From: Octopus sinensis | Lineage: Eukaryota | DNA: 64,000 nucleotides | NCBI RefSeq assembly: GCF_006345805.1 | Contig: NC_043001.1 | Span: 123,938,001-124,002,000, forward strand | Direction of reading: 5' to 3' | Shown: in pieces, positions 20,117 through 60,940 of the stretch | Numbering within the stretch: the stretch's first letter is position 1 | Layout: the number at the start of each line of letters is the position of its first letter | Position numbers and translations under genes: made by a program | Notes under the pieces: generated by a model | The model's input: the letters and a program-made list of their open reading frames with translations, nothing else | The model's database searches: none | What the model was told of the DNA's origin: nothing

Positions 20117-20205
20117 TAATAATAATAATAATAATAGAAGAAGAAGAAGAAGAAGAAGAAGAAGAAGAAGAAGAAAGAAGAAGAATGATAATAATAATAA
20201 TAATC
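19845..20205. repeat. (TAA)n/(TGA)n/(GAA)n array contiguous with the 3' tail of the adjacent minus-strand SINE
   Basis: Direct reading; the SINE ends ...gtagaaatg(ATT)n on its own strand. Confidence 0.9.
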
Positions 20206-20206
20206 A

Positions 20207-20513
20207 TTTCTACAATAAGGACACGACCTGAAATTTTGGGGGAGGAGTTAAGTCGATTACTTCGACCCCAATACTCAACGGGTACTTCATTTGAACTCAG
20301 AACGTAAAACACAGAGAGGAAAAACAAGGACAGATAAACGGACTAAGTCGATTATATCGACCCCAGTGCGTAACTGGTACTTATTTAATCGATCTCGAAA
20401 GGATGAAAGGCAAAGCCGATCCCGGCGGAATTTGAACTCAGAACGTAGCGGCAGACGAAATATCGCTAAACATTTTTTTCCGGCGTGCTAACGATTCAGC
20501 CAGCTCGCCACCT
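20207..20513 (-). mobile_element. SINE family A dimer with internal deletions
   Basis: Full first monomer with the ...tccgtttatctgtccttg tail, then a deleted second monomer with the ctcccccaaaatttcagg tail. Same order as 55961-56396. Confidence 0.8.
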
Positions 20514-20549
20514 TCATGAAAATAAATAAATAAATAAATAAATAAATAG

Positions 20550-20879: not shown

Positions 20880-21556
20880 CCAGATAGAGTAAAGTCTTAA
20901 AATCGACATGACAGTGTTGACGAGTGTCTATACTGGTTAATATATCGGCATTATAAAATCAAAACGCTTGATAAGTGGTATAAGCATCACTCTGAGGTTG
21001 TAATTGAGGGGGAAAACGTTAACTTTTCTCCTGGGGATTTCCTCAACATACAGACAGAATAATCAAAGCTAATAAACCGAATATTATTGTGAAAGACCAA
21101 AACAATAAAATCAGTTTATTGATTGGCATGAATATCCCTTGTGATCATATTATTGCATCAAAAGAAAGTGACGAGCTCAGAAAATATACGAATTTGCTAA
21201 TTGGAATCGGGAAAATAAGGCATCTCAAAGCGATTACAAAATCCGTGATTGTAGGATTACTAGGAATGAACAAAGAGGAACTGAAAATTATTTGAGAATG
21301 ATCCCTGGCCTATCATTCCTACATGATGTACGAAAATTGTTTTAAATTGTACGTCACACGTATTGAGAAGTTATTGTCGCTGTGAGACGGGCTACCCTCC
21401 ATGAAAATAATTCCTTTTGCGTATCTTTGTTGGATTTTACAAATGAGCAATCTTCTGCGTTTATTTTAATAGCCTATCAAAGTATATAGTGAGGTTCTTT
21501 GCCCTAAGTGCCGGGAAGACTCCCAGCAAGAAATGGTAACAAAACTACAGGAATAA
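20880..21556 (+). mobile_element. R4/Dong-type RLE retrotransposon 3' fragment, subfamily F2
   Basis: RHDSVDECLYWL..WYKHHSE..DRIIKANKPNIIVKDQNNK..ELRKYTNL (decayed PD-(D/E)xK RLE domain); 3' UTR ends AAAACTACAGGAATAA. Confidence 0.8.
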
Positions 21557-21569
21557 GAAAACCCATTAT

Positions 21570-21953
21570 AATGACTTTAATCAGTTCAGCATTTCCCTTG
21601 GTGGCTGACAATATTTGTATCCCTAACCACGAGTACCATAGCCATGTATTGAGAGAAATTCTTTGAGGTTTGAATAATTCACCTCTGTTTCGTTCAGCAT
21701 CCTTATACAACCCTCATTCAGGGACCCTTTGAGCAGGATGGGCTACCCAACTTGAAGATAAAACTTAATTGGGCTCGACCTGCAAGGTCATGCAATCTTT
21801 ATCATGATATGATATCACCATGTTGTACATTTTTGGTTGTGATGCATGTGCCTGGTGTACCTTTATTATACCGGTAGCCATGATGGGTATATTGGGCTTG
21901 GTATATTTGTACCACAGTGTCAATTTAATGGCATATGCTACACTGTCACTCAA
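21570..21953 (+). mobile_element. TAA-associated about 550-bp element, 5'-truncated older copy
   Basis: Homologous to 35041-35598 from ...gactttaatcagttcagc to ...cactcaa(TAA)n. Confidence 0.8.
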
Positions 21954-22154: not shown

Positions 22155-23000
22155 CGTTTAAACAATTGACTGATAGGTGTGAACAAAAAACCTCCGCATG
22201 GCAAATATGTGGCCCGTAGCAAGCAAGTTGATGTAGACCAGGGCTTAAGGCAGAGAGTGAAGGCTTTATCTTGGTTGCCCAAGATCAGAGCTTGTTGACC
22301 AGGAACTATCAAGCCAATGTGAGGTAAAATGGTGTAGACCCAAAGTGCCAATACTGCAACGTTTGGCTAGACCACCCAATCTCTGGATGTAAGGTTTAGG
22401 ACCTGTAGAGTACAAATCAAGACATGACAAAGTTGGCCAACATCTAAACTGGATAAGTTGTCGGCATTATAAAATCAAAACTGCTGACAAATGGTACAAG
22501 CACCACTCTGAGGCTTCAACTGAAGAGGAATAGTAACTTTTCTTTGGGAATTCCCAGTATGTACAGAGCGGACCATCAAAGTAGATAAACCAGATATTGT
22601 TGTGAAAGACCAAAACAATAAAATCTGTTCATTAATTGACCTGAGCATACCCTATAACCATAATATCTCAGCAAAAGAATTTGACACGCTCAGAAAATAT
22701 AAAGATTTGTTCATCCAAACCGAAAAGATGTGGCATCTCAAGACGGTTACAATACCAGTAACTGTAGAAGCACTTGGAATGTTCGAAACGGGAACTGAAA
22801 ATAAATTATTTAAGCATGATCTCTGGCTTACAATCCATGCAGGAAGTACAAAAGATTGTCTTAACTAGTAAGTGACACGTATTGAGAGAAGCACCGTTGC
22901 TGAGAATTTTCTTCCCCCTTTACACCTCTATTTTCTTTGTTTATTTAAAAAAAAATTTTTATTTGTGTTTAATCTAATGGCCTACCAAAATAGACAGTAG
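22155..23000 (+). mobile_element. R4/Dong-type RLE retrotransposon 3' fragment, subfamily F2
   Basis: KPPHGKY, AESEGFILVAQDQSLLTRNYQ, PKCQYC, RHDKVGQHL, KPDIVVKDQNNKICSLIDLSIP..KYKDL..WHLKTVTIPV..ALGM; begins directly after (TAA)n. Confidence 0.85.
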
Positions 23001-23058
23001 AAACAAAATTGAAAGATGATGATAATGAAATGATAACAACAACAACAACAACAACAAT

Positions 23059-23152
<94 letters not shown>

Positions 23153-23327
23153 ACACCATATAGAAGAAATTGCCATAAAACCCAGTTTAGTACAGCTCCA
23201 GAAAACAATGTTATTAGGGGCAGCTAGGATACTTAGGAAGGTTCTTGGCATCTGAGATTACTTGTAACCCGATGTTAGGAACTTTTCTTTTCCGACAGTC
23301 TCCTCTGTTGTTGTGCATATGCGTGAT
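23153..23327 (+). mobile_element. R4/Dong-type extreme 3' end, subfamily F3 (copy 1)
   Basis: SLVQLQKTMLLGAARILRKVLGI* (cf. IQKIALLGTAHILRRTL at 37450-37500), a short 3' UTR, then (TAA)n. Confidence 0.75.
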
Positions 23328-23328
23328 G

Positions 23329-23417
<89 letters not shown>

Positions 23418-23486
23418 TATTATTATTATTATTGTTGTTGTTGTTGTTATTATTATTATTATATTATTATTATTATTATTATTATA

Positions 23487-23661
23487 ACACCATATAGAAG
23501 AAATTGCCATAAAACCCAGTTTAGTACAGCTCCAGAAAACAATGTTATTAGGGGCAGCTAGGATACTTAGGAAGGTTCTTGGCATCTGAGATTACTTGTA
23601 ACCCGATGTTAGGAACTTTTCTTTTCCGACAGTCTCCTCTGTTGTTGTGCATATGCGTGAT
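23487..23661 (+). mobile_element. R4/Dong-type extreme 3' end, subfamily F3 (copy 2, apparently identical)
   Basis: Repeat of 23153-23327 at a 334-bp offset. Confidence 0.75.
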
Positions 23662-23662
23662 G

Positions 23663-23747
<85 letters not shown>

Positions 23748-23780
23748 TCATTATTATTATTATTATTGTTGTTGTTGTTG

Positions 23781-23872
<92 letters not shown>

Positions 23873-31719: not shown

Positions 31720-31721
<2 letters not shown>

Positions 31722-31971
31722 AACCCCAAAGAATCCCCCCCAACACATGGCTATGATGCTCCCTCACTATTTCTGCTCGTGATCAGAGATGCACATATTG
31801 TCAGCCACTAAGGGACATGCTCAACTTGTTATGGTCAAACAACTGTGGTATTGACAGAATATTTGCTGTAGCCCATCTTTTATACCAAGACAAAACAACG
31901 TACATGATAACACGTCCAATCAGTTAAGATCAGAAGCCATGACAGCCACTGCCTGATAATACATCAGGGCA
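31720..31971 (-). mobile_element. TAA-associated element, 5' half
   Basis: Minus strand begins TGCCCTGATG right after (TAA)n and ends at a (TAG)n array. Confidence 0.85.
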
Positions 31972-32041: not shown

Positions 32042-32510
32042 TTAAGTGACAGAGCAGTGCATGCCATCAAAGTGACACTGGGGTAGAAATATACGAAGCC
32101 CAATATACCCATCATGACTACCCGTCTGATAAGGGTACACCAGGCACATGCATCACAACCATATGTGCGCGACATGGTGATCTCATATCACGATAAACAG
32201 CACATGACCTTGCAGGTGGGGCCCAGTTAGTATTTTCTTCAGGTTGAGTAGCCCATCCCGCTCAATAGGTCCCTGAATAAGGGTTGTTTAAGGATGTTGA
32301 AAGAACCACCCATGTTTCCAGAGGTGAATTATTCAAACCCCAAAGAATCCCTCTCAACACATGGCTATGATGCTCCCCCACTACTTCTGCTCGTGATCAG
32401 AGATGCACATATCGTCAGTCATTAAGGGACATGCTCAACTGGTTAAGGTCAAACAACTGACAAGCAAATCTGTGGTATTGAGCAGAATATTTGCTGTAGC
32501 CCATCTTTTA
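32042..32510 (-). mobile_element. TAA-associated element, 5'-truncated
   Basis: Reverse complement of about 35130-35598, bounded by (TTA)n on both sides. Confidence 0.9.
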
Positions 32511-32642
32511 TTATTATTATTATTATATTATTATTATATTATTATTATTATATTATATTATTATTATTATTATTATCATTATTATTATTATTATTATCAT
32601 TGTTGTTGTTCTTTTGTTGTTGTTGTTGTTTTGTTATTGTTG

Positions 32643-32844: not shown

Positions 32845-33057
32845 GTGGTGAACTGGCATAATCGTTAGCACGTCTGGTAAAGTACTTAACGGCATTTCGT
32901 CCGCCGTTACAATATTTTTTCAAATTCTTCCGAGACCGACGTCGCCTTCTCATCCTTTCGGGGTCGACAAAATAAATACATATTGAGAACCGGGGTCGAT
33001 GTACTCGACTAGTAAACTTGCCCAAAATTTCAGCCCTTTTGGTGAAATTCTGAAAAA
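32845..33057 (+). mobile_element. SINE family A
   Basis: ggtgaactggcataatcgttagcacg...ggggtcgatgtactcgact...cccaaaatttcagccc. Confidence 0.8.
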
Positions 33058-34250: not shown

Positions 34251-34955
34251 TTATTTATCATTGCTTCCGTAGAAAAGCTATTTTCCGAACTCTGTGGGTT
34301 TGGAATAGAATGGTAGTTTAATAGGAAGATGTGCAAAATTTCGCCCTCGTCCTTTCACTCTCTCACTTTGTAACAGATAGCCAACAATGAGATTAAAATG
34401 CCAGGTTACAAATTATATTTTTAAACCTCATGTTAGAGCCAACTCCGTTCTGTTTAATGACATTTTGACGGTGCTGTTATCAATGTTGTTCTACATTCAT
34501 ACTGTTCGTCTTTGCATCTGATGTATAAATATTTTATGAACAACTTTCATATTATTTAATTGCCTCGTTCACTTGTCTGTCAATTTGAGACGTTGTTTCA
34601 TCTGAAGAATTATAAGCAATTGCCGACGAGAGAGGATTTTAAGCAACAGTTAGACCACCCAGACAGACTAGTTAAATGTCAACTAAAAGAAAGAAGACAC
34701 TGATAATATAATCGTATATGCAATGTCTCGTACATGGTTGTCACAGTGGGAATGCTATTGATATTAGGTCTGCTAGCTTAGTGCAACATCACAAATCCAC
34801 AGACTTCCCGTGTTCTACATTCTCTTTCATTCACTCAGTTTGCAGACCAACATCATATTTTCGCCTTCATGGTTTTAGAACAGTAATTATCATTAGGAAT
34901 CGTCTACTGTAAAATAATCATCATCAACGGTGTTGTCCACTATGTAATAAAGAAT

Positions 34956-35013
<58 letters not shown>

Positions 35014-35040
35014 TAATAATAATAATAATAATATTAATTG

Positions 35041-35596
35041 TGTCCTGATGCAGTACCAGACAGTGGCTCTCATGGCTTCTGATCCTAACTGATTGGAAGT
35101 GTTATTATGTACATTGTTTTTGTCTTGGTATAAAAGATGGGCTACAGCAAATATTCTGCTCAATACCACAGATTTGCTTGCTAGTTGTTTTACCTTAACC
35201 AGTTGAGCATGTCCCTTAGTGGCTGACGATATGTGCATCTCTGATCACGAGCAGAAATAGTGGGGGAGCATCATAGCCATGTGTTGAGAGGGATTCTTTG
35301 GAGTTTGAATATTTTACCTCTGGAAACATGGGTGGTTCTTTCAACATCCTTAAACAACCCTTATTCAGGGACCTTTTGAGCGGGATGGGCTACTCAACCT
35401 GAAGAAAATTCTAACTGGGCCCCACCTGCAAGGTCATGTGCTGTTTATCTTGATATGAGATCACCATGTCGCGCACATATGGTTGTGATGCATGTGCCTG
35501 GTGTACCCTTATCAAACGGATAGTCATGATGGGTATATTGGGCTTCGTATATTTTACCCCAGTGTCACTTTGATGGCATGCACTGCTCTCTCACTC

Positions 35597-35598
<2 letters not shown>
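35041..35598 (+). mobile_element. TAA-associated element, full length (558 bp)
   Basis: (TAA)n..TGTCCTGATGCAGTACCAGACAGTGG...GCACTGCTCTCTCACTCAA-(TAA)n. Confidence 0.9.
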
Positions 35599-35635
<37 letters not shown>

Positions 35636-35647
35636 TATAATAATAAA

Positions 35648-35682
<35 letters not shown>

Positions 35683-35764
35683 TAATAATAATAATAATAA
35701 TTAATAATGAAATAATAAATAAAATATAATAATAATAATAATAATAAGAAATAATAATAATAAA

Positions 35765-36217
35765 TGCCCTGTGCAGTACCGCAGTGGCTCTCATGGTTCT
35801 GATCTTAACTGATTAGAAGTGTTATCATGTACATTGTTTTTGTCTTGGTATAAAAGATGGCTACAGCAAATATTCTGCTCAATACCACAGATTTGCTTGT
35901 CAGTTATTGACCATAACCAGTTGAGCATGTCCCTTAGTTGGCTGACGATATGTGGCATCTCTGATCACGAGCAGAAGTAGTGGGGGAGCATCTTTTGAGC
36001 GGGATGGGTTACTCAACCTGAAGAAAATTCTAACTGGGCTCCACCTGCAAGGTCATGTGCTGTTTATCTTGATATGAGATCACCATGTCGCGCACATATG
36101 GTTGTGATGCATGTGCCTGGTGTATCCTTATCAGACGGGTAGTCATGATGGGTATACTGGGCCTCGTATATTTTACCCCAGTGTCACTTTGATGGCATGC
36201 TCTGCTCACTCACTCAA
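35765..36217 (+). mobile_element. TAA-associated element with an about 105-bp internal deletion
   Basis: Same termini; junction ggagcatc|ttttgagcggg. Confidence 0.9.
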
Positions 36218-36245
36218 TAATAATAATAATGAAATAATAATAATG

Positions 36246-37610
36246 AAATGAACTGACCAAAATAGATAGGAAATCAAGAAAAATAATGACAGGATCTAAG
36301 ATGCATCACCCAAAATCTGACATAGAAAGACTATATATACAACGTATAGAAGGTGGTAGAGGACTTATACAGCTGGAAAACTACTATAAAATAACCACCA
36401 TAGGACTGCAAAAATACCTACTTCAGAAGGAAGGAAAACTGATCCAGATAGCAGCAACAAAACACGAGCAAACAAAAAACTGTTCTCAGTATTTAAGGAA
36501 GCTGACAAATACAAACAAGAAATCATACCACCTAATAAATATAGAAGAAGAAGAAGAGAAGAAGAAGAGAAGAAGAAGAGAAGAAGAAGAAGAAGAAGAA
36601 GAAGAAGAAGAAGAGAAGAAGAAGAAGAAGAAGAAGAAGAAGAAAACAAAAACAAAAGCTATAAAACAAATGAAATCCAAACTAAAAATAGAACAATGAA
36701 CCATGATAAAACGATGGCAAGAAAAGCCCCTTCATGGTAAATACTGGACTAAACTAAACGCAAAAGAAATAGACAAAGAAAAATCCCAGCAATGGTTGAG
36801 AAGCTCAGGACTCAAAGCTGAGACAGAGGGATTTTTAATTGCAGCACAAGACCAAAGCCTCCCCACCAGAAATTACCAAAAACATGTAATGAAAAGAAAT
36901 ATAACAAGTAACTGCAGAATATGTGGAGATGGACAAGAAACAATAATGATTCTTTATTTGGACAAGAAACAATAAATCATATTATCTCTGGCTGCCCAGT
37001 CCTGGCTAAGAAGGAATATATTCACAGACATGACAGAGTTGGAACCTACATACACTGGAAGCTATGCCAACATTATGGAATAACAACAGAAAAAAGATGG
37101 TATAGGCACACACCAGAAAAGGTCACAGAAAACGAGAAAGCAACCATACTCTGGGATATGCCGATACACATAGATAGAGAAATTAAGGCCAACAGACCAG
37201 ATATAGTTGTCAGAGATCATGAAGACAACAAATGCTTTCTAATTGATGTATCAATACATGAAGATGACAACGTGTCTCTAAAAGAAATGGAGAAAATTTC
37301 AAAATACAAAGACCTGGAAATAGAGGTAACCAGAATGTGGAATCTAAAAACTGAAACAATTCCTAGCATAGTAGGTGCATTAGGTATGATAAAAAAATAT
37401 TCAGACAAATACACAACAAAAGCACCAGGACTTACAAACACATATAACATACAGAAAATTGCACTACTAGGCACTGCACACATCCTACGCAGAACACTTT
37501 CCATACAATAACCATCAGAGCATCACAACAAATCACAGCACATACCTAAGACACACAGAGCTGCGCTCGGTAGTGAAGTGAAAGCACGCTATAAAAATAA
37601 AACTACTGAA
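36246..37610 (+). mobile_element. R4/Dong-type RLE retrotransposon, subfamily F1, 5'-truncated, young
   Basis: NELTKIDRK..HPKSDIERLY..GGRGL, KPLHGKY, ETEGFLIAAQDQ, CRICG..ETINHIISGC (CCHC), RHD, RPDIVV..LIDVSI..EKISKYKDL (RLE), LLGTAHILRRTL*. One in-frame stop near 36697 and a frameshifting insertion near 36947; ends aaaactactgaa(TAA)n. Confidence 0.92.
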
Positions 37611-37644
37611 TAATAATAATAATAATAATAATATAATAATAATA

Positions 37645-37676
<32 letters not shown>

Positions 37677-37702
37677 TGATGATGATGATGATGACGATGA
37701 TC

Positions 37703-37797
<95 letters not shown>

Positions 37798-37800
37798 CAA

Positions 37801-38345
37801 TGCCCTGATGCAGTACCAGACAGTGGCTCTCATAGCTTCTGATCTTAACTGATTGGAAGTGTTATCATGTACATTGTTTTGTCTTGGTATAAAAGATGGG
37901 CTACAGCAAATATTCTGCTCAATACCACAGATTTGCTTGTCAGTTGTTTGACTTTAACCAGTTGAGCATGTCCATTAGTGGCTGACGATATGTGCATCTC
38001 TGATCACGTGCAGAAGTAGCGGGGAGCATCTTAGCCATGTGTTGACAGGGGTTTTGGGGGTTGAATAATTCACCTCTGGAAACATGGCTGTTTTGTTCAA
38101 CATCCTTAAACAACCCTTATTCAGGGACCGTTTGAGCGGGATGGGTTACTCGACCAGAAGAAAATTCTAAGAAGGGACCACCTGCAAAAGTTATGCGCTG
38201 TTTATCTTGATATGAGATCACCATGTCGCGCACATATGGTTGTGATGCATCTGCCCTTATCAGACGGGTAGTCATGATGGGTATACTGGGCTTCGTATAT
38301 TTCTACCCCAGTGTCACTTTGATGGCATGCACTGCTCTCTCACTC

Positions 38346-38347
<2 letters not shown>
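37801..38347 (+). mobile_element. TAA-associated element, near full length (547 bp)
   Basis: (TAA)n..TGCCCTGATG...CACTCAA-(TAA)n. Confidence 0.9.
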
Positions 38348-38398
<51 letters not shown>

Positions 38399-38439
38399 TA
38401 ATAATAAATAATAGCAGCCATATATCTTTTGCTTTAAAA

Positions 38440-40380
38440 TAACAGTCATCGCTGTATATCGCATCGTCAGGAAGTTCATAACGATGGATCATCATCTTGA
38501 TCTTCCTTGTGGTGTCCTTAATTGGATTGAATTCATATATATTCACTATATTTTAAGTCAGTCTACATCTTTATATTATCCCTCCATTTAATCCTTGGTT
38601 TTCCTCTTCTTTTCTCATTAACTTTTGCTTTCTGTTAACTTTGTCCAAAAATATTTTAGTTTTATTTCTTTGATGATATCTAATAAAAACATACTTCATT
38701 GATTTTGTTTTCTGGCAATGATATTCTGAAAAATCTTGTATACATCCACATTTCAAACGCTTATGATCTATCTTATAGTACTTTAGTTAATGTCTATTTT
38801 CCAGCTCAGTGTAATAGTGTGAACTATACCTAATATTTTAATAATCATTTTCTGGTTTCGATATTAATGTTTCTTGATGTTCGCGAGTCAGACCAATTTT
38901 TTACAAATGCCTTTCCATTCACTTCACTCCATCCCTTGATTTGTGCTTTTCACTCCTGTTTACTGATTGCACACATTCAAGGTATGTTATCTTTGGCGTT
39001 TATTCAAATGAATAAACCATCCCAATAATCTGTATTAGCTTTTGGTTTTCATATTTTTCTTTAATTACACCTATTGCTCACAGTCGATCTATGCATATGA
39101 TTTTCATATTCCCAAATTTTGTTTCTCTTATTCTCAAGTGTAATCATTGTATGTCTATAGTGCTTCTAAGTGAAATCTCTCTATGTATTCTATTGACACA
39201 GGTATGGCTGTGTAGTTGAGAAGTTTGATTCGCAATGAAAACCTCCTGATTCCACAGAGTGTAAAGTGTTCTACCCAATTGTACTCAGTGTTTCTTTTAA
39301 GCTGAAGAAACTATAAAATTTCTACTGATAGATAATACTCAATATTCTCATTTAGTAAAAACTATGCGTATTACTGTATATGAACTACGATATCATTGAT
39401 CAAGAAGAGTGGAAAATCGCGGAACTGAAGTTTGAATTTCTCATACACTATTGTCATTATGTGTAATATTTAGTTTAACGGAGTCGAACAGCAGACAGAA
39501 TCGGTAGCACGCCGAGCTAAATGCTTAGCGACATCTCGTCCGTCTTTATATTCTGTGTTCAACTTCCGCCGAGGCCAAGTTTATCTTTCATCCATTCGGG
39601 GTTGATAAAATAAGTACCAACAGAGCACTAGTGTCGATGTAATCGACTTATTCCCTAACTTGTGCCAAAATTTGAAAGCAATATTCAGGTTAAACGATAC
39701 TTGTCTCTTGTCAACTGTTTGTGCACGAAATACATTTGTACTCTGAGAGTGAGTTATTCAACGTTTTCCTTTGGTTTTCATTTATAAAAAATTGTAGTTT
39801 TACTGAATAACATTCCCCATATCATACTTCACGATAATATAATAAATTTTTCCCATCTTTCCAATACTGCACCTATATTTATATGTGGCATTACATCATC
39901 ATCCTACAATTCCCCACGTACTCTTTCCTTGCATCGCTTTTGTTCTCAAAGTAAAATTCCAATATGTATTCTATTGATTAAATTGTTGATTTAATTCATA
40001 CATTTATATTTATTCATTCTTCATATCTGAAAAACTTCAGTTATTCAGTCCAGACGTCTTCGCTTTAAATTCTTCTATCACGGTTGGAAGTCCGTTCCAT
40101 TCAACATTGTCTTGTTTTCTTTCCATTTTTCAAATATAATTTTCTTTGTAATTTTTTTTTGTCTTAGCATATTTTAAACAAAACTTTAATTTTGTTTCTC
40201 TCACACTTGTATGTTTACGCAATATTTTGATGTTATCTCCAATCCTCCTCTTCTATCATAGCTCAGACATTTAATTCCGTTATATTTCAATGTTATTCCC
40301 AATCGATCGACAACGTGCTAGTTAGTGGCATTCAGTCAGTTGTTTGTCTTCGTAACATTGGCTTCTTATTTACGCACCTA
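38440..40380 (-). mobile_element. Old RTE-clade LINE remnant, interrupted by a SINE
   Basis: Minus about 38860-38500: NIETRK..TLTK..AFEMW..RIS..KRRGKPRIKWRDNIK (RTE C-terminus). Upstream extent is weakly supported. Confidence 0.55.
39481..39682 (+). mobile_element. SINE family A
   Basis: cagaatcggtagcacgccgagctaaatgcttagcg...gtcgatgtaatcgactta. Confidence 0.8.
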
Positions 40381-47964: not shown

Positions 47965-49225
47965 CATGTATGCACGTAGGTTTTTCATTATTCACTTTTA
48001 TTTCAAGCATTCTTGCCAACGGGGAAAGAACGGGTTCTAACCTAGATACAATGCTCTTTGATTGGAGCTTTAGCAACATCAACAGCGTATTTTTGCATAT
48101 ATTTTGTTTATGTGTAGTAGCTGGAGTCAATGCTTTTGCAGATTTGTATGTTTTTATTCATATATATGTATGTCATTATTTACTTTTATTTCAAGATTTC
48201 TTCCCAGTAGAGAACGAGCCGGTTTCTAACCGAGATCCAAGGCTCCTTCGTTGGAAATCCAACATCAACAACAGGGTATTTTTGTACGTATGTATATATG
48301 TATATGGTGCAGATTTGTATGTTTTGTTTTATGAATGTCTGCTCACGCATATAGTTGTACGTCTACAGCTTTCACCTTTTTTTTTTTCTGAAGCCTAATT
48401 TCCCAAGATTGGAATCTATGCAGCGTGTTACATGTCCCAGTGCTTTAAAAATTACAGGTATAAATCTGAACTTGTAATCTTCGTACCTGCAAATTTCTCA
48501 ATAGTTCAGCGTAGGTATTCTCATTTTCACTGATCTTCACCTTTATGTTAACATCCGCTGGACAGCTGATTTCCACAATTGTATACAGTTCCTTTTCTCT
48601 ATCTCAAATCATTACTTGAAGTTTATTGTGCTTATATCTTATGGAGGTTTACACTGGGACATTCCACCTGTAGTCCTTTTTATTATGAGGGACTATGGCT
48701 TCTACCATACTGTGTGTTTTTATTTCTTTGTCCTTGGGGTTATCCGTTCGACGGATCTCGTTATACAGTGTCCTAGCTATAACTTCATATCTCATCGGTA
48801 GATATAACCGTAATGCCATTTTTGGACAACTGCTTATGATCAGGGTGATATCTTCGGGGTTAAGTCCAGAAAATCTACATCGGTTGTCACATTTTACTGC
48901 ATTTCCTGCATCTCCGTACCTTTTGTGCATCAGGTGTTTGGTTGGTATTTCATGTTCCCGGATTGCAAACGTATACCCTTCAAAGCAATAGGTAGTATTC
49001 TGATTGTTAGTCCATGACAGACTGCTTTGATGATCAATGTACTATCATCTCGAAGCTTTCTACGATCATATCTATGCAAGGTGTTCTGCTTACATATGCT
49101 CATCCTTGTAAGTATATCTTTTCTGTTTGTGTATGTATGTATGCCTCTTCTATTTTTTAATAATTATAGATCTTCCACCGAGGAGGAAACCGGTATCCAA
49201 CAAAGATACAAGGTTCTATCACATT
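47965..49225 (-). mobile_element. RLE-type non-LTR retrotransposon fragment with three copies of its putative 3' end
   Basis: Minus 49050-48390: FEGYTFAIREHEIPTKHL, CRFSG..EDITLIISSCPKM, MRYEVIA, RWNVPV, KISENENTYAELLRNL. The 3' unit (ggagccttggatctcggttagaaaccgg...aataatgacatacata) occurs at about 48345-48165, 48165-47965 and 49225-49120. Confidence 0.7.
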
Positions 49226-54691: not shown

Positions 54692-54696
<5 letters not shown>

Positions 54697-55029
54697 TAGA
54701 TGTATTTTTATAGCGTGCTTTCACTTCACTACCGAGCGCAGCTCTGTGTGCCTTGGGTATGTGCTGTGATTTGTTGTGATGCTCTGATGGTTATTGTATG
54801 GAAAGTGTTCTGCGTAGGATGTGTGCAGTGCCTAGTAGTGCAATTTTCTGTATGTTATATGTGTTTGTAAGTCCTGGTGTTTTTGTTATGTATTTGTCTG
54901 AATATTTTTTATCATGCCTGATGCACCTACTATGATAGGAATCGTTTCTGTTTTTAGATTCCACATTCTGGTTACCTCTATTTCCAGGTCTTTGTATTTT
55001 GAAAGTTTCTCCATTTCTTTTAGAGACAC

Positions 55030-55032
<3 letters not shown>
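54692..55032 (-). mobile_element. R4/Dong subfamily F1 3' fragment inside a (TAA)n array
   Basis: Near-identical to 37270-37610 (NVSLKEMEK..LLGTAHILRRTLSIQ* plus 3' UTR); (TTA)n on both sides. Confidence 0.92.
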
Positions 55033-59325: not shown

Positions 59326-59405
59326 TAATAATAATAATAATACTACTAATAATAATAATAATAATGATGATGATAATAATATTGATAATCATAAGAATAA
59401 TAATG
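58975..59405. repeat. (CGT)n/(TAG)n/(TAA)n/(TGA)n array
   Basis: Direct reading; contiguous with the tail of the SINE at 59405. Confidence 0.95.
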
Positions 59406-59615
59406 ATCCTTTCTATCAGCACAATGCCTGAAATTTGTAGGAACGCACTAGTCGATTAGATCGACCCCAATACGTAACTGATACTTAATTTATCGACCCC
59501 GAAACGATCAAAAGCAAAGTTGACCTCGGCAGAATTTGAACTCAGAACGTCAAGACAGACGAAATGCCGCTAAGCATTTTGATCGGCTAACGATTCTGCC
59601 AGCTCACCGCCTTCA
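59405..59615 (-). mobile_element. SINE family A with (ATT)n tail
   Basis: gtcgattagatcgacccc...gaatttgaactcagaacg...ctaacgattctgccagctcaccgcc; on its own strand it ends agaaaggatc(ATT)n. Confidence 0.88.
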
Positions 59616-59623
59616 TAGTAATC

Positions 59624-59671
<48 letters not shown>

Positions 59672-59672
<1 letters not shown>

Positions 59673-60181
59673 GTACCAGGCAGTGACTCTGTTGGCTTCT
59701 TATCTTAACTGATTGGCAATAGTATCATGTATATTGTTTTGTCTTCCTATAAAAGATGGGCTACAGCAAATATTCTGCTCAATATCACAGATTTTCTGGT
59801 TTGACCTTAGCCAATAGAACATGTCTTTTAGTGGCTGACAATATATGTATCTCTGTAGTGGGGGAGCGTCATAACCATGTGTTGAGACGAATTATTTAAG
59901 GTTTGAATATTTCACCTCTGAAAACACGGGTGTTCCGTTGAACATCCTTAAAGAACCCTTATTCAGGCACCATTTGCGCGGAATGGGCTACTCGACCTGA
60001 AAAAAATTCCAACTAGGCCCCACCTGCAAGGTCATACGCTTTTTGTCTTTTAATGAGATTACCATATCGCGCACATATGATTATGATGCATGTGCCTGGT
60101 GTACTATTATCAGACAGGTAGTCATGATGGGTATCCTGCGTTTCGTATATTTTACCCCAGTGTAACTGCTCTGTCACACAA
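59672..60181 (+). mobile_element. TAA-associated element, older copy
   Basis: (TAA)n-agtaccaggcagtgactc...ctgctctgtcacaca-(TAA)n. Confidence 0.85.
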
Positions 60182-60289: not shown

Positions 60290-60823
60290 TTGAGTCGTAG
60301 AGCAGCACATGCCATCAAAGTGGCGCTGGGGTACAAATATGAAACCACCCATCTGATAAGGCTACACAAGGTACATGCATCATATTCATATGTGTGTGAC
60401 ATGCTGAACTTTTATCAGGATAAACAGCGCACGACCTTGCAGCTGGGATTCAATTAGAATTTTCTTCAGTTCGAGTAGCCCATCCTACTCAAACTGTCCC
60501 TGAATAAATGTTATTTAAGGATGATGCAGGAAACACCCATATTTTCAACGCTGAATTATTCAAACCCTAAAGATTCCTCTCAACACGTGGCTTTGATGCT
60601 CCCCTAGTACTTTTTATTCTTGATCAGAGATGCACATACCGTCAGCAACTAAGTTACATGCTCAAGTTGTTAAAGCCAAGCAATTTACAAGCAAATCTGT
60701 GATATTGAGCAGAATTTTTTTCCGTAGCCCATCGTTGTTTTACACCAAGACAAAACCTGCACGGGTCAACAGTTCCTGTCATTTAAGATCAGAAGTCATG
60801 AAAGCTGCCTGATAGTGCATCAT
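60290..60823 (-). mobile_element. TAA-associated element, older copy, inverted relative to 59672-60181
   Basis: (TTA)n-ttgagtcgtagagcagcacatgccatcaaag...gatcagaagtcatgaaagctgcctgatagtgcatc. Confidence 0.8.
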
Positions 60824-60848: not shown

Positions 60849-60940
60849 AAAGCGGCAAGCTGGCAGAATCGTTAGCACGGCGGGCAAAATCTTTAGCGGC
60901 TTTTCGCACGTCATTACGATCTGAGGTCGACTTTTCCTGG
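60849..60940 (+). mobile_element. SINE family A (partial)
   Basis: gcggcaagctggcagaatcgttagcacgg. Confidence 0.75.

What the first reader, a model, noticed from the sequence alone, without database searches (positions are those of the whole stretch)
35041..38347. About 550-bp non-coding element with fixed ends that sits almost only in (TAA)n arrays (8 copies in the window)
Seen: copies at 21570-21953, 31720-31971, 32042-32510, 35041-35598, 35765-36217, 37801-38347, 59672-60181 and 60290-60823. Intact ends are constant (5' TGCCCTGATGCAG, 3' CACTCAA then TAA). Orientation follows the strand carrying TAA, there is no ORF, and I see no tRNA A/B-box head, unlike the window's SINEs. Truncated copies are mostly 5'-truncated, as expected for target-primed reverse transcription. 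Known: R4/Dong-clade RLE retrotransposons can target TAA microsatellites, and short internally deleted elements (SIDEs) parasitise R2 in Drosophila. Inference: this may be a Pol III-independent non-autonomous retroelement that borrows a Dong-type enzyme. Its 3' end does not match the F1-F3 3' UTRs here, so any partner lies elsewhere.
Basis: partly seen in the sequence, partly recalled or inferred. Interest (0 to 1): 0.8.

Follow-up and report, generated by a model that had tools for sequence, protein, structure and literature searches.

The report
Octopus TAA-microsatellite-specific non-autonomous retroelement
A 558-bp non-coding mobile element from an octopus genome sits only in (TAA)n microsatellites, in the same way as the Dong/R4-type LINE fragments beside it, so it is most likely a parasite of that LINE's enzyme; this is an uncharacterised example of a known kind of element, not a new kind.

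Summary
BLASTN and a profile search find exactly the eight listed copies of a ~558-bp element. Every 3' end reads ...CACTCAA followed by (TAA)n on the element's own strand, and six copies also have TAA repeats upstream. Three are clearly 5'-truncated, one is 3'-truncated, one has an internal deletion, and there is no ORF.

The host is an octopus. Translated element pieces match three Octopus bimaculoides gene models, and one fetched O. bimaculoides locus carries a full-length copy with the same ends and TAA flanks.

The only other transposable-element 3' ends that abut TAA arrays in the TAA sense here belong to 5'-truncated Dong/R4-like (R2-related, RLE-type) LINE fragments from at least four families. 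One of these families is about as young as the young element copies. Borrowing of a Dong-type enzyme is therefore the best-supported mechanism, but it is inferred, not shown.

The element shares no sequence with any local Dong 3' UTR or protein. I found no ribozyme, tRNA or 5S signal. Independence from Pol III is not proven.

One copy (21574-21953) lies directly behind a Dong 3' UTR. I read this as an independent insertion.

Verdict: a real, moderately interesting new member of a known kind.

The parts
35041..35598 (+). Full-length element copy (558 bp), used as the reference; TAA arrays on both sides
   Evidence: 97% identical to the majority consensus.
35765..36217 (+). Element copy with both ends intact and an internal deletion of about positions 233-332
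37801..38347 (+). Full-length element copy (547 bp); exact 5' TGCCCTGATGCAG and 3' CACTCAA followed by (TAA)n
32042..32511 (-). 5'-truncated copy (positions 90-558). The 5' junction lies at an internal TATAAAA next to the TAA array, which gives microhomology
31720..31971 (-). Copy with an intact 5' end that is 3'-truncated at position 267 and abuts a (TAG)n array
59672..60181 (+). Older copy (positions 12-558, 86% to consensus); TAA arrays on both sides
60290..60823 (-). Older, near full-length copy (positions 6-558, 83% to consensus); 3' end followed by TAA then (TGA)n
21574..21953 (+). Older 5'-truncated copy (positions 152-558). It directly follows the 3' UTR of Dong-like fragment Fa, with no TAA array upstream
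20901..21573 (+). Dong/R4-like fragment Fa: degraded RLE-domain ORF ending near 21380, then about 190 bp of 3' UTR
   Evidence: tblastn; sequence.
22188..23040 (+). Dong/R4-like fragment Fb (CCHC and RLE region plus 3' UTR), ending in (CAA)n then (TAA)n
36250..37608 (+). Dong/R4-like fragment Fc (5'-truncated, with an intact 196-codon C-terminal ORF). It is inserted in the same TAA array as three element copies, in the same orientation. Its 3' end reads ...ACTACTGAA followed by (TAA)n
   Evidence: A relative, P0018, aligns to solved R2 proteins across the RT and RLE regions.
54694..55030 (-). Dong/R4-like fragment Fe: a short 5'-truncated copy of the Fc family (96% identical to Fc), flanked by TAA arrays
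23152..23325 (+). Very short 5'-truncated Dong-like 3' end (Fg: ...LLGAARILRK plus about 70 bp of UTR), ending in (TAA)n. A second copy lies at 23487-23660 inside a 334-bp tandem duplication
   Evidence: the reading-frame assignment is by my inspection.
34957..35038 (+). (TAA)n array upstream of copy 35041, bounded on its left by unique sequence. This shows the element sits inside an array and does not merely carry a tail

Best explanation
This is a family of about 558-bp non-coding, non-autonomous non-LTR retrotransposons in octopus genomes. The copies were integrated by target-primed reverse transcription into (TAA)n microsatellites.

Proposed mechanism:
1. A master copy is transcribed from a defined 5' end (TGCCCTGATGCAG...) through ...CACTCAA into the downstream (UAA)n. 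The polymerase is unknown.
2. A Dong/R4-type LINE protein (reverse transcriptase plus C-terminal CCHC and restriction-like endonuclease), supplied in trans, nicks the TTA strand of a TAA array.
3. The (UAA)n 3' tail pairs with the nicked target and cDNA synthesis starts at a fixed register.
4. Synthesis either reaches the 5' end, which gives full-length copies with 0-3 extra bases at the junction, or aborts. Aborted copies are joined by microhomology and appear as 5'-truncated copies.

Shown: the family, its ends, its lack of coding capacity, its oriented restriction to TAA arrays, its truncation pattern, its presence in O. bimaculoides, and its co-residence with Dong-like LINEs.

Inferred: the RNA intermediate, the identity of the enzyme donor, recognition through the tail, and the polymerase.
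For: - Eight copies in the window and one in an unrelated O. bimaculoides locus share the same ends.
- Every copy with a 3' end abuts (TAA)n in the sense orientation. The chance probability is about 2e-19 if all eight are counted.
- Seven of the nine copies also have TAA repeats upstream. One such array is bounded by unique DNA.
- Copy density tracks TAA content: 8 copies per 2.07 kb of array in the window and 1 copy per about 0.3 kb in L003.
- As a control, only 4 of 15 fragments of the window's tRNA-type SINE touch TAA/TTA arrays.
- Three copies have 5' truncations with intact 3' ends. There is no ORF and no blastx similarity to Dong proteins.
- The only other transposable-element 3' ends that abut TAA arrays in the TAA sense are Dong-like RLE LINE fragments from at least four families. 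Their relatives align to solved R2 proteins across the RT and RLE regions.
- Fc and Fe are 96% identical to each other, while the young element copies are 95-98% identical to their consensus. This points to overlapping periods of activity.
- Dong elements are documented to target TAA microsatellites, including in a snail (PMC3812793). Dong-R4 has the largest base-pair coverage of recently active LINE insertions in O. vulgaris: 5 families, 1129 insertions, 4.7 Mb (PMC13282606).
- Three O. bimaculoides gene models contain exonised element pieces. Two of them also include the translated TAA flank.
Against: - The element has no detectable sequence similarity to the 3' UTRs of the three window Dong fragments tested, Fa, Fb and Fc (local-alignment z between -1.1 and 1.0). 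The usual signature of a LINE/SINE partnership is therefore absent.
- No full-length Dong was available, so 5' UTR homology is untested.
- Target-site duplications or deletions cannot be read inside a microsatellite.
- No transcript data were available.
- Shared target and orientation could also arise with another enzyme that uses TAA-tailed RNAs.
- The sample is only 150 kb of genome and nine copies.
Confidence: 0.6

Rival explanations
1. The element is an internally deleted derivative (SIDE) of a Dong/R4 family that is not represented in this window. It would share both UTRs with that parent and be recognised through the parent's 3' UTR, not merely through the TAA tail.
For: R2 and CR1 SIDEs exist (PMC3414825, PMC6740152). 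O. vulgaris has several recently active Dong-R4 families (PMC13282606), and only 5'-truncated fragments of four or five families could be examined here. The defined 5' end would then be the parent's transcription start.
Against: There is no similarity to the three local Dong 3' UTRs tested and no coding remnant. No parent was found. The only element-derived proteins in the 5.8-billion-cluster search were three host gene models.
Confidence: 0.2
2. It is simply the 3' UTR of an autonomous Dong-like LINE. The 'full-length' 558-bp copies would then reflect a preferred truncation point, and copy 21574-21953 behind fragment Fa would show the true upstream continuation.
For: Copy 21574-21953 follows the Fa ORF and UTR with no TAA array between them.
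Against: Five copies (four in the window, one in L003) start at the same base, each preceded directly by TAA repeats. Random truncation does not give that. The Fa junction is at element position 152, not position 1, and the sequence upstream of it has no similarity to element positions 1-151. Fa already has about 190 bp of 3' UTR before the junction, which is at or above the 70-135 bp of its relatives Fb, Fc and Fg. Its sister fragment Fb ends without the element.
Confidence: 0.06
3. It is a conventional Pol III-transcribed SINE whose head is too diverged or of an unrecognised type. It would be mobilised by Dong or by another LINE.
For: Octopus genomes hold hundreds of unclassified SINE families (PMC13282606). 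The Rfam search also failed to detect the tRNA-like head of the window's bona fide SINE, so negative searches are weak evidence. There is a weak A-box-like match at position 46.
Against: ARAGORN and Rfam found no tRNA, 5S, 7SL or snRNA. No A/B box pair with tRNA-like spacing exists in the first 200 nt. The consensus has T4 runs at positions 77 and 333, which would tend to terminate Pol III. At 558 bp it is at the long end for a SINE.
Confidence: 0.12
4. The TAA repeats are the element's own expandable 3' tail, as in RTE-type LINE/SINE microsatellite families, and the enzyme donor is a non-Dong LINE. The apparent targeting would come from tail-to-target annealing or from nested insertions into earlier tails.
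For: RTE elements generate microsatellite families (PMC2887409), and the octopus RTE has a microsatellite 3' UTR (PMC9115989). The window's tRNA-type SINEs carry (ATT)n tails.
Against: Upstream TAA repeats are present in seven of nine copies, including an 82-bp array bounded by unique DNA. The SINE tails are (ATT)n on the SINE sense strand, the opposite polarity. The only LINE fragments ending in sense (TAA)n here are Dong-like.
Confidence: 0.08
5. The copies arose by DNA-level duplication (a satellite-like or segmental process), not by transposition.
For: Five of the eight window copies cluster within 7 kb and are 91-97% identical to each other. A 334-bp tandem duplication exists nearby at 23117-23820.
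Against: The clustered copies differ in orientation, truncation point and internal deletion. Flanks beyond the TAA arrays are unrelated. A copy with the same ends lies in an intron region of an O. bimaculoides gene on another fetched locus, and pieces occur in two further genes.
Confidence: 0.02

Closest known systems
Dong (Bombyx mori) and DongAg/DongBg: R4-clade, restriction-like-endonuclease LINEs specific for (TAA)n
   Same: Insertion into (TAA)n with the TAA strand as the sense strand, 5' truncations, and a precise 3' junction. Dong-like fragments occupy the same arrays as the element (PMC3812793).
   Different: Dong is autonomous (RT plus CCHC plus RLE ORF). This element has no ORF and no nucleotide or protein similarity to the local Dong fragments.
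R2 SIDEs of Drosophila (short internally deleted elements; PMC3414825)
   Same: Non-autonomous, with no Pol III head. They depend on a site-specific RLE LINE and share that LINE's target.
   Different: R2 SIDEs keep the parent's 5' HDV-like ribozyme and its 3' UTR. Here no ribozyme was detected and no 3' UTR match to any available Dong was found. The target is a microsatellite, not rDNA.
Persaeus, a SIDE derived from the CR1 element Zenon in Lepidoptera (PMC6740152)
   Same: A headless, non-coding, high-copy derivative that relies on a LINE.
   Different: Persaeus shows clear homology to its parent and has no target specificity.
Classical tRNA-derived SINEs, including the octopus SINE present in this window (e.g. 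59405-59615, minus strand)
   Same: Short, non-coding, dispersed and LINE-dependent.
   Different: Those SINEs have a tRNA-like head with box A/B-like motifs and carry (ATT)n on their sense strand. Most are outside TAA arrays: 11 of 15 fragments. The element has no such head and is always at a TAA array.
RTE-associated microsatellite families of Lepidoptera (PMC2887409)
   Same: A repeat family whose copies are flanked by a microsatellite.
   Different: In those families the microsatellite is a 3' tail generated by the element. Here TAA arrays flank both ends and pre-exist.

Membership tests
Non-autonomous non-LTR retrotransposon (general) | No coding capacity | tested here: met
   The longest stop-free stretch is 68 codons in any frame of five copies. 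blastx finds only three host gene models that contain exonised element pieces.
Non-autonomous non-LTR retrotransposon (general) | Constant 3' end with variable 5' truncation (the TPRT signature) | tested here: met
   The 3' end CACTCAA is present in all copies that keep a 3' end. 5' ends fall at positions 1 (four window copies plus L003), 6, 12, 90 and 152.
Non-autonomous non-LTR retrotransposon (general) | Dispersed copies at unrelated loci | tested here: met
   A copy in O. bimaculoides CM046622.1 (L003:70547-71103) and pieces in two further gene models.
Dong/R4-dependent, TAA-specific element | Insertion within (TAA)n with the TAA strand as the sense strand | tested here: met
   All copies with a 3' end are followed by sense (TAA)n, and seven of nine have TAA upstream. 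The chance probability is about 2e-19.
Dong/R4-dependent, TAA-specific element | 3' end shared with the partner LINE | tested here: not met
   No significant local alignment with the 3' UTRs of Fa, Fb or Fc. Only the window's fragments could be tested.
Dong/R4-dependent, TAA-specific element | Mobilisation by Dong protein | not testable with these tools
   This needs a retrotransposition or in vitro TPRT assay.
SIDE (short internally deleted element) | 5' and 3' segments colinear with the UTRs of a full-length parent LINE | tested here: inconclusive
   The 3' end is not matched by local Dong fragments. No full-length octopus Dong (and so no 5' UTR) could be obtained. All Dong copies in the window are 5'-truncated.
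R2-type element with a 5' HDV-like ribozyme | A self-cleaving ribozyme fold at the 5' terminus | tested here: not met
   No Rfam ribozyme family matches at E<=10 on two copies. A permissive nested double-pseudoknot descriptor gave no more hits than shuffled sequence. No covariation was seen. A novel ribozyme class cannot be excluded.
Classical SINE | Head derived from tRNA, 7SL, 5S or snRNA with an internal Pol III promoter | tested here: inconclusive
   ARAGORN and Rfam are negative and there is no A/B box pair. However, the Rfam control on the window's genuine tRNA-type SINE was also negative.
Dong/R4 clade LINE (applies to the neighbouring fragments Fa-Fg, not to the element) | RT followed by a CCHC motif and a restriction-like endonuclease; TAA target | tested here: met
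   A zf-RVT hit just below Pfam's cut-off. Relatives (about 50% identity) carry RVT_1 and align to R2 structures over the RT and RLE regions. Fb, Fc, Fe and Fg end in (TAA)n. Phylogenetic placement within R4/Dong rather than other RLE clades was not tested.
Helitron / MITE / other DNA transposon | Terminal inverted repeats, or 5' TC with a 3' CTRR hairpin; no 5' truncation series | tested here: not met
   The ends are TGCCCTG... and ...CACTCAA with no inverted repeat, and a 5' truncation series is present.

The most novel reading that the evidence does not exclude
A Dong/R4-type restriction-like-endonuclease LINE may choose its template only through a (UAA)n 3' tail that pairs with the nicked TAA target. 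Any transcript ending in (UAA)n could then be copied. This headless element, unrelated in sequence to the LINE, would be a pure 'tail-mimic' parasite. That would make an RLE LINE a 'relaxed' enzyme analogous to L1 with poly(A), with the microsatellite acting as both address and recognition signal.
Probability: 0.25. Interest if true: 0.55.

Novelty: new member of a known kind. Interest (0 to 1): 0.35.

Why it matters
Non-autonomous partners of site-specific RLE LINEs are rarely described. R2 SIDEs are the main example, and SIDEs in general are called rare (PMC6740152). My limited literature searches found no described dependant of a microsatellite-specific Dong/R4 element.

If the partnership is real, it offers a natural test of how R4-clade enzymes pick their RNA template: by 3' UTR structure or by tail-to-target pairing.

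On the practical side, the family seems common enough to contaminate O. bimaculoides gene models, since three proteins carry translated pieces. It also fragments TAA microsatellites. Both points matter for octopus repeat annotation, gene annotation and microsatellite markers.

Tried and rejected
1. Rfam at gathering thresholds on the whole window and on L003, and at E<=10 on two copies, gave nothing relevant. The control on the window's tRNA-type SINE also gave nothing, so these negatives are weak.
2. ARAGORN found no tRNA.
3. A home-made HDV-like descriptor performed no better than shuffles.
4. RNAalifold on the 5' 110 nt and the 3' 160 nt showed no useful covariation. The whole-element MFE z-score is only about -2. 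Folds of the 3'-terminal 89 nt of the element and of the Dong UTRs showed no significant shared structure.
5. Two exact-pattern scans of the JGI metagenome contigs returned zero hits.
6. Exact look-up of the window's Dong ORF and of two UniRef octopus proteins found nothing on record. No more octopus DNA could therefore be fetched, and the window's species within Octopus was not determined.
7. Accession searches for GCA_024449705 and SRR7158634 in the paper library were uninformative.
8. Pfam scans of five other window ORFs gave nothing above cut-off.
9. Rejected: the Helitron, MITE and satellite readings, and the 'LINE 3' UTR with random truncation' reading. Reasons are given under the rival explanations.
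Full report
**Observation**

I read 34800-38600. I searched the window with copy 35041-35598 by BLASTN and later with an nhmmer profile built from all copies.

| Copy | Strand | Element positions | Note |
|---|---|---|---|
| 21574-21953 | + | 152-558 | 5'-truncated |
| 31720-31971 | - | 1-267 | 3'-truncated |
| 32042-32511 | - | 90-558 | 5'-truncated |
| 35041-35598 | + | 1-558 | full length |
| 35765-36217 | + | both ends | about 233-332 deleted |
| 37801-38347 | + | 1-558 | full length |
| 59672-60181 | + | 12-558 | 5'-truncated |
| 60290-60823 | - | 6-558 | near full length |

- Oriented flanks and the alignment show that every copy that keeps its 3' end finishes with CACTCAA, or a one- or two-base variant. 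Each is followed at once by (TAA)n on the element's own strand.
- Four copies begin with TGCCCTGATGCAG or a near variant, directly after TAA repeats. Zero to three odd bases sit at that junction.
- Six of the eight copies have TAA repeats upstream. For copy 35041 the upstream array (34957-35038) is bounded on its far side by unique sequence. The element therefore lies inside an array and does not merely carry a tail.
- TAA arrays make up 3.2% of the window.
- The probability that a random oriented position is followed by (TAA)4 in phase is 0.0047. Across the eight copies that gives about 2e-19.
- As an internal control, only 4 of 15 fragments of the window's tRNA-type SINE touch TAA/TTA arrays.
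- No frame of any copy is open for more than 68 codons.

**Host and dispersal**

The window's origin was unknown. I concatenated the stop-free translations of the element on both strands and searched the protein collection. Only three proteins matched, all Octopus bimaculoides gene models:
- a PP2A B-alpha subunit (P0132);
- a sushi-domain protein (P0133);
- a cGMP-dependent kinase (P0134).

All three contain translated element pieces. In P0132 the piece ends in ...ALSLNNNNNN, which is CACTCAA plus (AAT)n read in the sense direction. In P0134 it begins LLLLLSE..., which is the same junction read antisense.

The P0132 locus (L003, 85.7 kb of chromosome CM046622.1) holds one full-length copy at 70547-71103, 88% identical to copy 35041. 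Its 5' flank reads ...aaataataata|TGCCCTG and its 3' flank reads CACTCAA|(taa)10.

So the family is dispersed in an octopus genome with the same ends and flanks. Copy number scales with TAA content: 8 copies per 2.07 kb of array in the window and 1 copy per about 0.3 kb in L003.

I could not decide which Octopus species the window comes from.

**What shares the arrays**

tblastn with the ORFs next to the element finds several 5'-truncated fragments of LINEs. They carry a C-terminal CCHC motif and a PD-(D/E)XK-type region:
- Fa, 20901 to about 21573;
- Fb, 22188-23040;
- Fc, 36250-37608;
- Fe, 54694-55030 (minus strand);
- two very short 3' ends (Fg) at 23152-23325 and 23487-23660;
- a more distant fragment at 48396-49038 (minus strand).

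Fc gives a zf-RVT hit just below Pfam's cut-off. Its relatives at about 50% identity carry RVT_1. One of them, P0018, aligns to solved R2 proteins from the RT region through the endonuclease region.

Fb, Fc, Fe and Fg all end in (TAA)n on their sense strand. This is the Dong behaviour described for Bombyx, Anopheles and the snail Biomphalaria (PMC3812793). Dong-R4 is reported as abundant and recently active in octopus (PMC9115989, PMC13282606).

Going through every TAA array in the window, the only transposable-element 3' ends that abut an array in the TAA sense belong to the element and to these Dong-like fragments. The tRNA-type SINEs instead carry (ATT)n on their sense strand.

Fc and Fe are 96% identical to each other. 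The five clustered element copies are 95-98% identical to their consensus. The two families were therefore probably active over overlapping periods.

**What the element is not**

- It has no similarity to the 3' UTRs of Fa, Fb or Fc. Local-alignment z-scores lie between -1.1 and 1.0, against 6.8 for Fa versus Fb.
- It has no blastx similarity to 131 Dong-like proteins.
- Rfam gives nothing at gathering thresholds and nothing relevant at E<=10 on two copies. ARAGORN finds no tRNA.
- These negatives need care. The same Rfam search also failed on the window's genuine tRNA-type SINE head. I therefore scanned directly for box A and box B motifs. The element has no A/B pair with tRNA-like spacing.
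- The consensus has T4 runs at positions 77 and 333, which would hinder Pol III. Independence from Pol III is therefore plausible but not shown.
- An HDV-like nested double-pseudoknot descriptor at the 5' end gave no more hits than shuffled sequence.
- Alignment folding gave no covariation. Whole-element folding energy is only about two standard deviations below shuffles.
- There are no terminal inverted repeats or Helitron-type ends.

**The copy behind a Dong fragment**

In fact copy 21574-21953 follows fragment Fa directly, with no TAA array between them. This could mean that the element's 3' 400 bp is Fa's own UTR. I think an independent insertion is more likely, for four reasons:
- Fa's ORF ends near 21380. 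Fa therefore already has about 190 bp of 3' UTR before the junction, at or above the 70-135 bp of Fb, Fc and Fg.
- The junction is at element position 152, and nothing upstream resembles positions 1-151.
- The sister fragment Fb ends without the element.
- The last bases before the junction (ttataatg) look like the start of a TAA tail.

Both pieces are old (the element part is 85% identical to the consensus), so the question stays open. It is the first thing to check genome-wide.

**Mechanism**

I commit to the following, at about 0.6 confidence:
1. A master copy is transcribed from a defined start through CACTCAA into the downstream (UAA)n.
2. A Dong/R4-type protein supplied in trans nicks the TTA strand of a TAA array.
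3. The (UAA)n tail pairs with the nicked DNA and sets the register.
4. Reverse transcription runs to the 5' end or aborts. 5' joining adds a few bases or uses microhomology. For example, copy 32042-32511 is joined at an internal TATAAAA.

Shown: the anatomy, the oriented target restriction, the truncation pattern, the dispersal, and the co-residence and similar age with Dong-like LINEs.

Inferred: the RNA intermediate, the enzyme donor, recognition through the tail, and the polymerase.

**Comparison with known elements, and novelty**

It works like an R2 SIDE or a target-specific SINE, that is, a non-coding rider on a site-specific RLE LINE. It fails the SIDE and SINE membership tests that I could run: no shared 3' end with the available Dong fragments, no ribozyme and no Pol III head.

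My literature searches found no described dependant of Dong/R4. These searches are limited, and I had no access to Repbase or Dfam. The family is very likely already present as an unclassified entry in octopus repeat libraries. O. vulgaris alone has 893 recently active unclassified SINE families and 58 recently active unknown-repeat families (PMC13282606).

I rate it a new member of a known kind, with interest 0.35. The more novel reading is a pure tail-mimic that would reveal relaxed template choice by an RLE LINE. I give that about 0.25 probability.

Noticed in passing
window 20901-21953: A degraded Dong-like RLE ORF with about 190 bp of 3' UTR (Fa) is joined directly to element positions 152-558, with no TAA array between them. 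It is either an insertion at the very start of Fa's tail or a LINE-element chimera or parent.
   Followed up: partly
window 23117-23820: A 334-bp unit is tandemly duplicated (2.1 copies, 98% identical). Each unit consists of (ATT)n, then a very short 5'-truncated Dong-like 3' end, then (TAA)n. This gives head-to-head (TAA)n(TTA)n microsatellite junctions, an odd inverted-microsatellite arrangement at the 5' junction of a Dong insertion.
   Followed up: no
window 59405-59615 (-), 20204-20516 (-), 32847-33045 (+), 60849-60928 (+); L003 about 36219 and about 45930: The tRNA-type octopus SINEs carry (ATT)n, the opposite polarity to Dong and the element, at their 3' ends. In five of six inspected cases (TTA)n lies immediately upstream of the SINE head. 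SINE insertions and TAA/TTA arrays therefore seem linked in a second way, with the opposite orientation.
   Followed up: partly
window 48396-49038 (-): A more distant RLE-type LINE fragment (22-26% identity to Dong-like proteins, with a CCHC-like motif). It does not end in TAA. Downstream lie unrelated repeats and (CA)n, (CAG)n and (GTA)n arrays. It may belong to a different RLE clade.
   Followed up: no
O. bimaculoides proteins P0132, P0133, P0134; L003:70547-71103: Three annotated or UniRef O. bimaculoides proteins (a PP2A B-alpha isoform, a sushi/SVEP1-like protein and a cGMP-dependent kinase) contain translated pieces of this element, in two cases including the translated TAA array. These are probably annotation artefacts or exonisations.
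   Followed up: partly
L001 (Logan SRR7158634) and L002 (GCA_024449705.1, JAANSU013411523.1): Contigs from two other data sets carry Fc-family Dong 3' halves, 89% and 77% identical in DNA to the window copy. L001 ends ...ACTACTGAACAA followed by (TAA)n. The species could not be identified. No element-derived ORF from these data sets turned up in the protein search.
   Followed up: partly
whole window: Microsatellite load is extreme (109 TRF rows in 64 kb: AT, TATC, TCT, AAT, GTAT and others) at 34% G+C.
   Followed up: no
window 59380-59640: Rfam in permissive E-value mode does not recognise the tRNA-like head of the window's SINE. Negative Rfam or ARAGORN results should therefore not be taken as proof that a repeat in this genome lacks a Pol III head.
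   Followed up: yes
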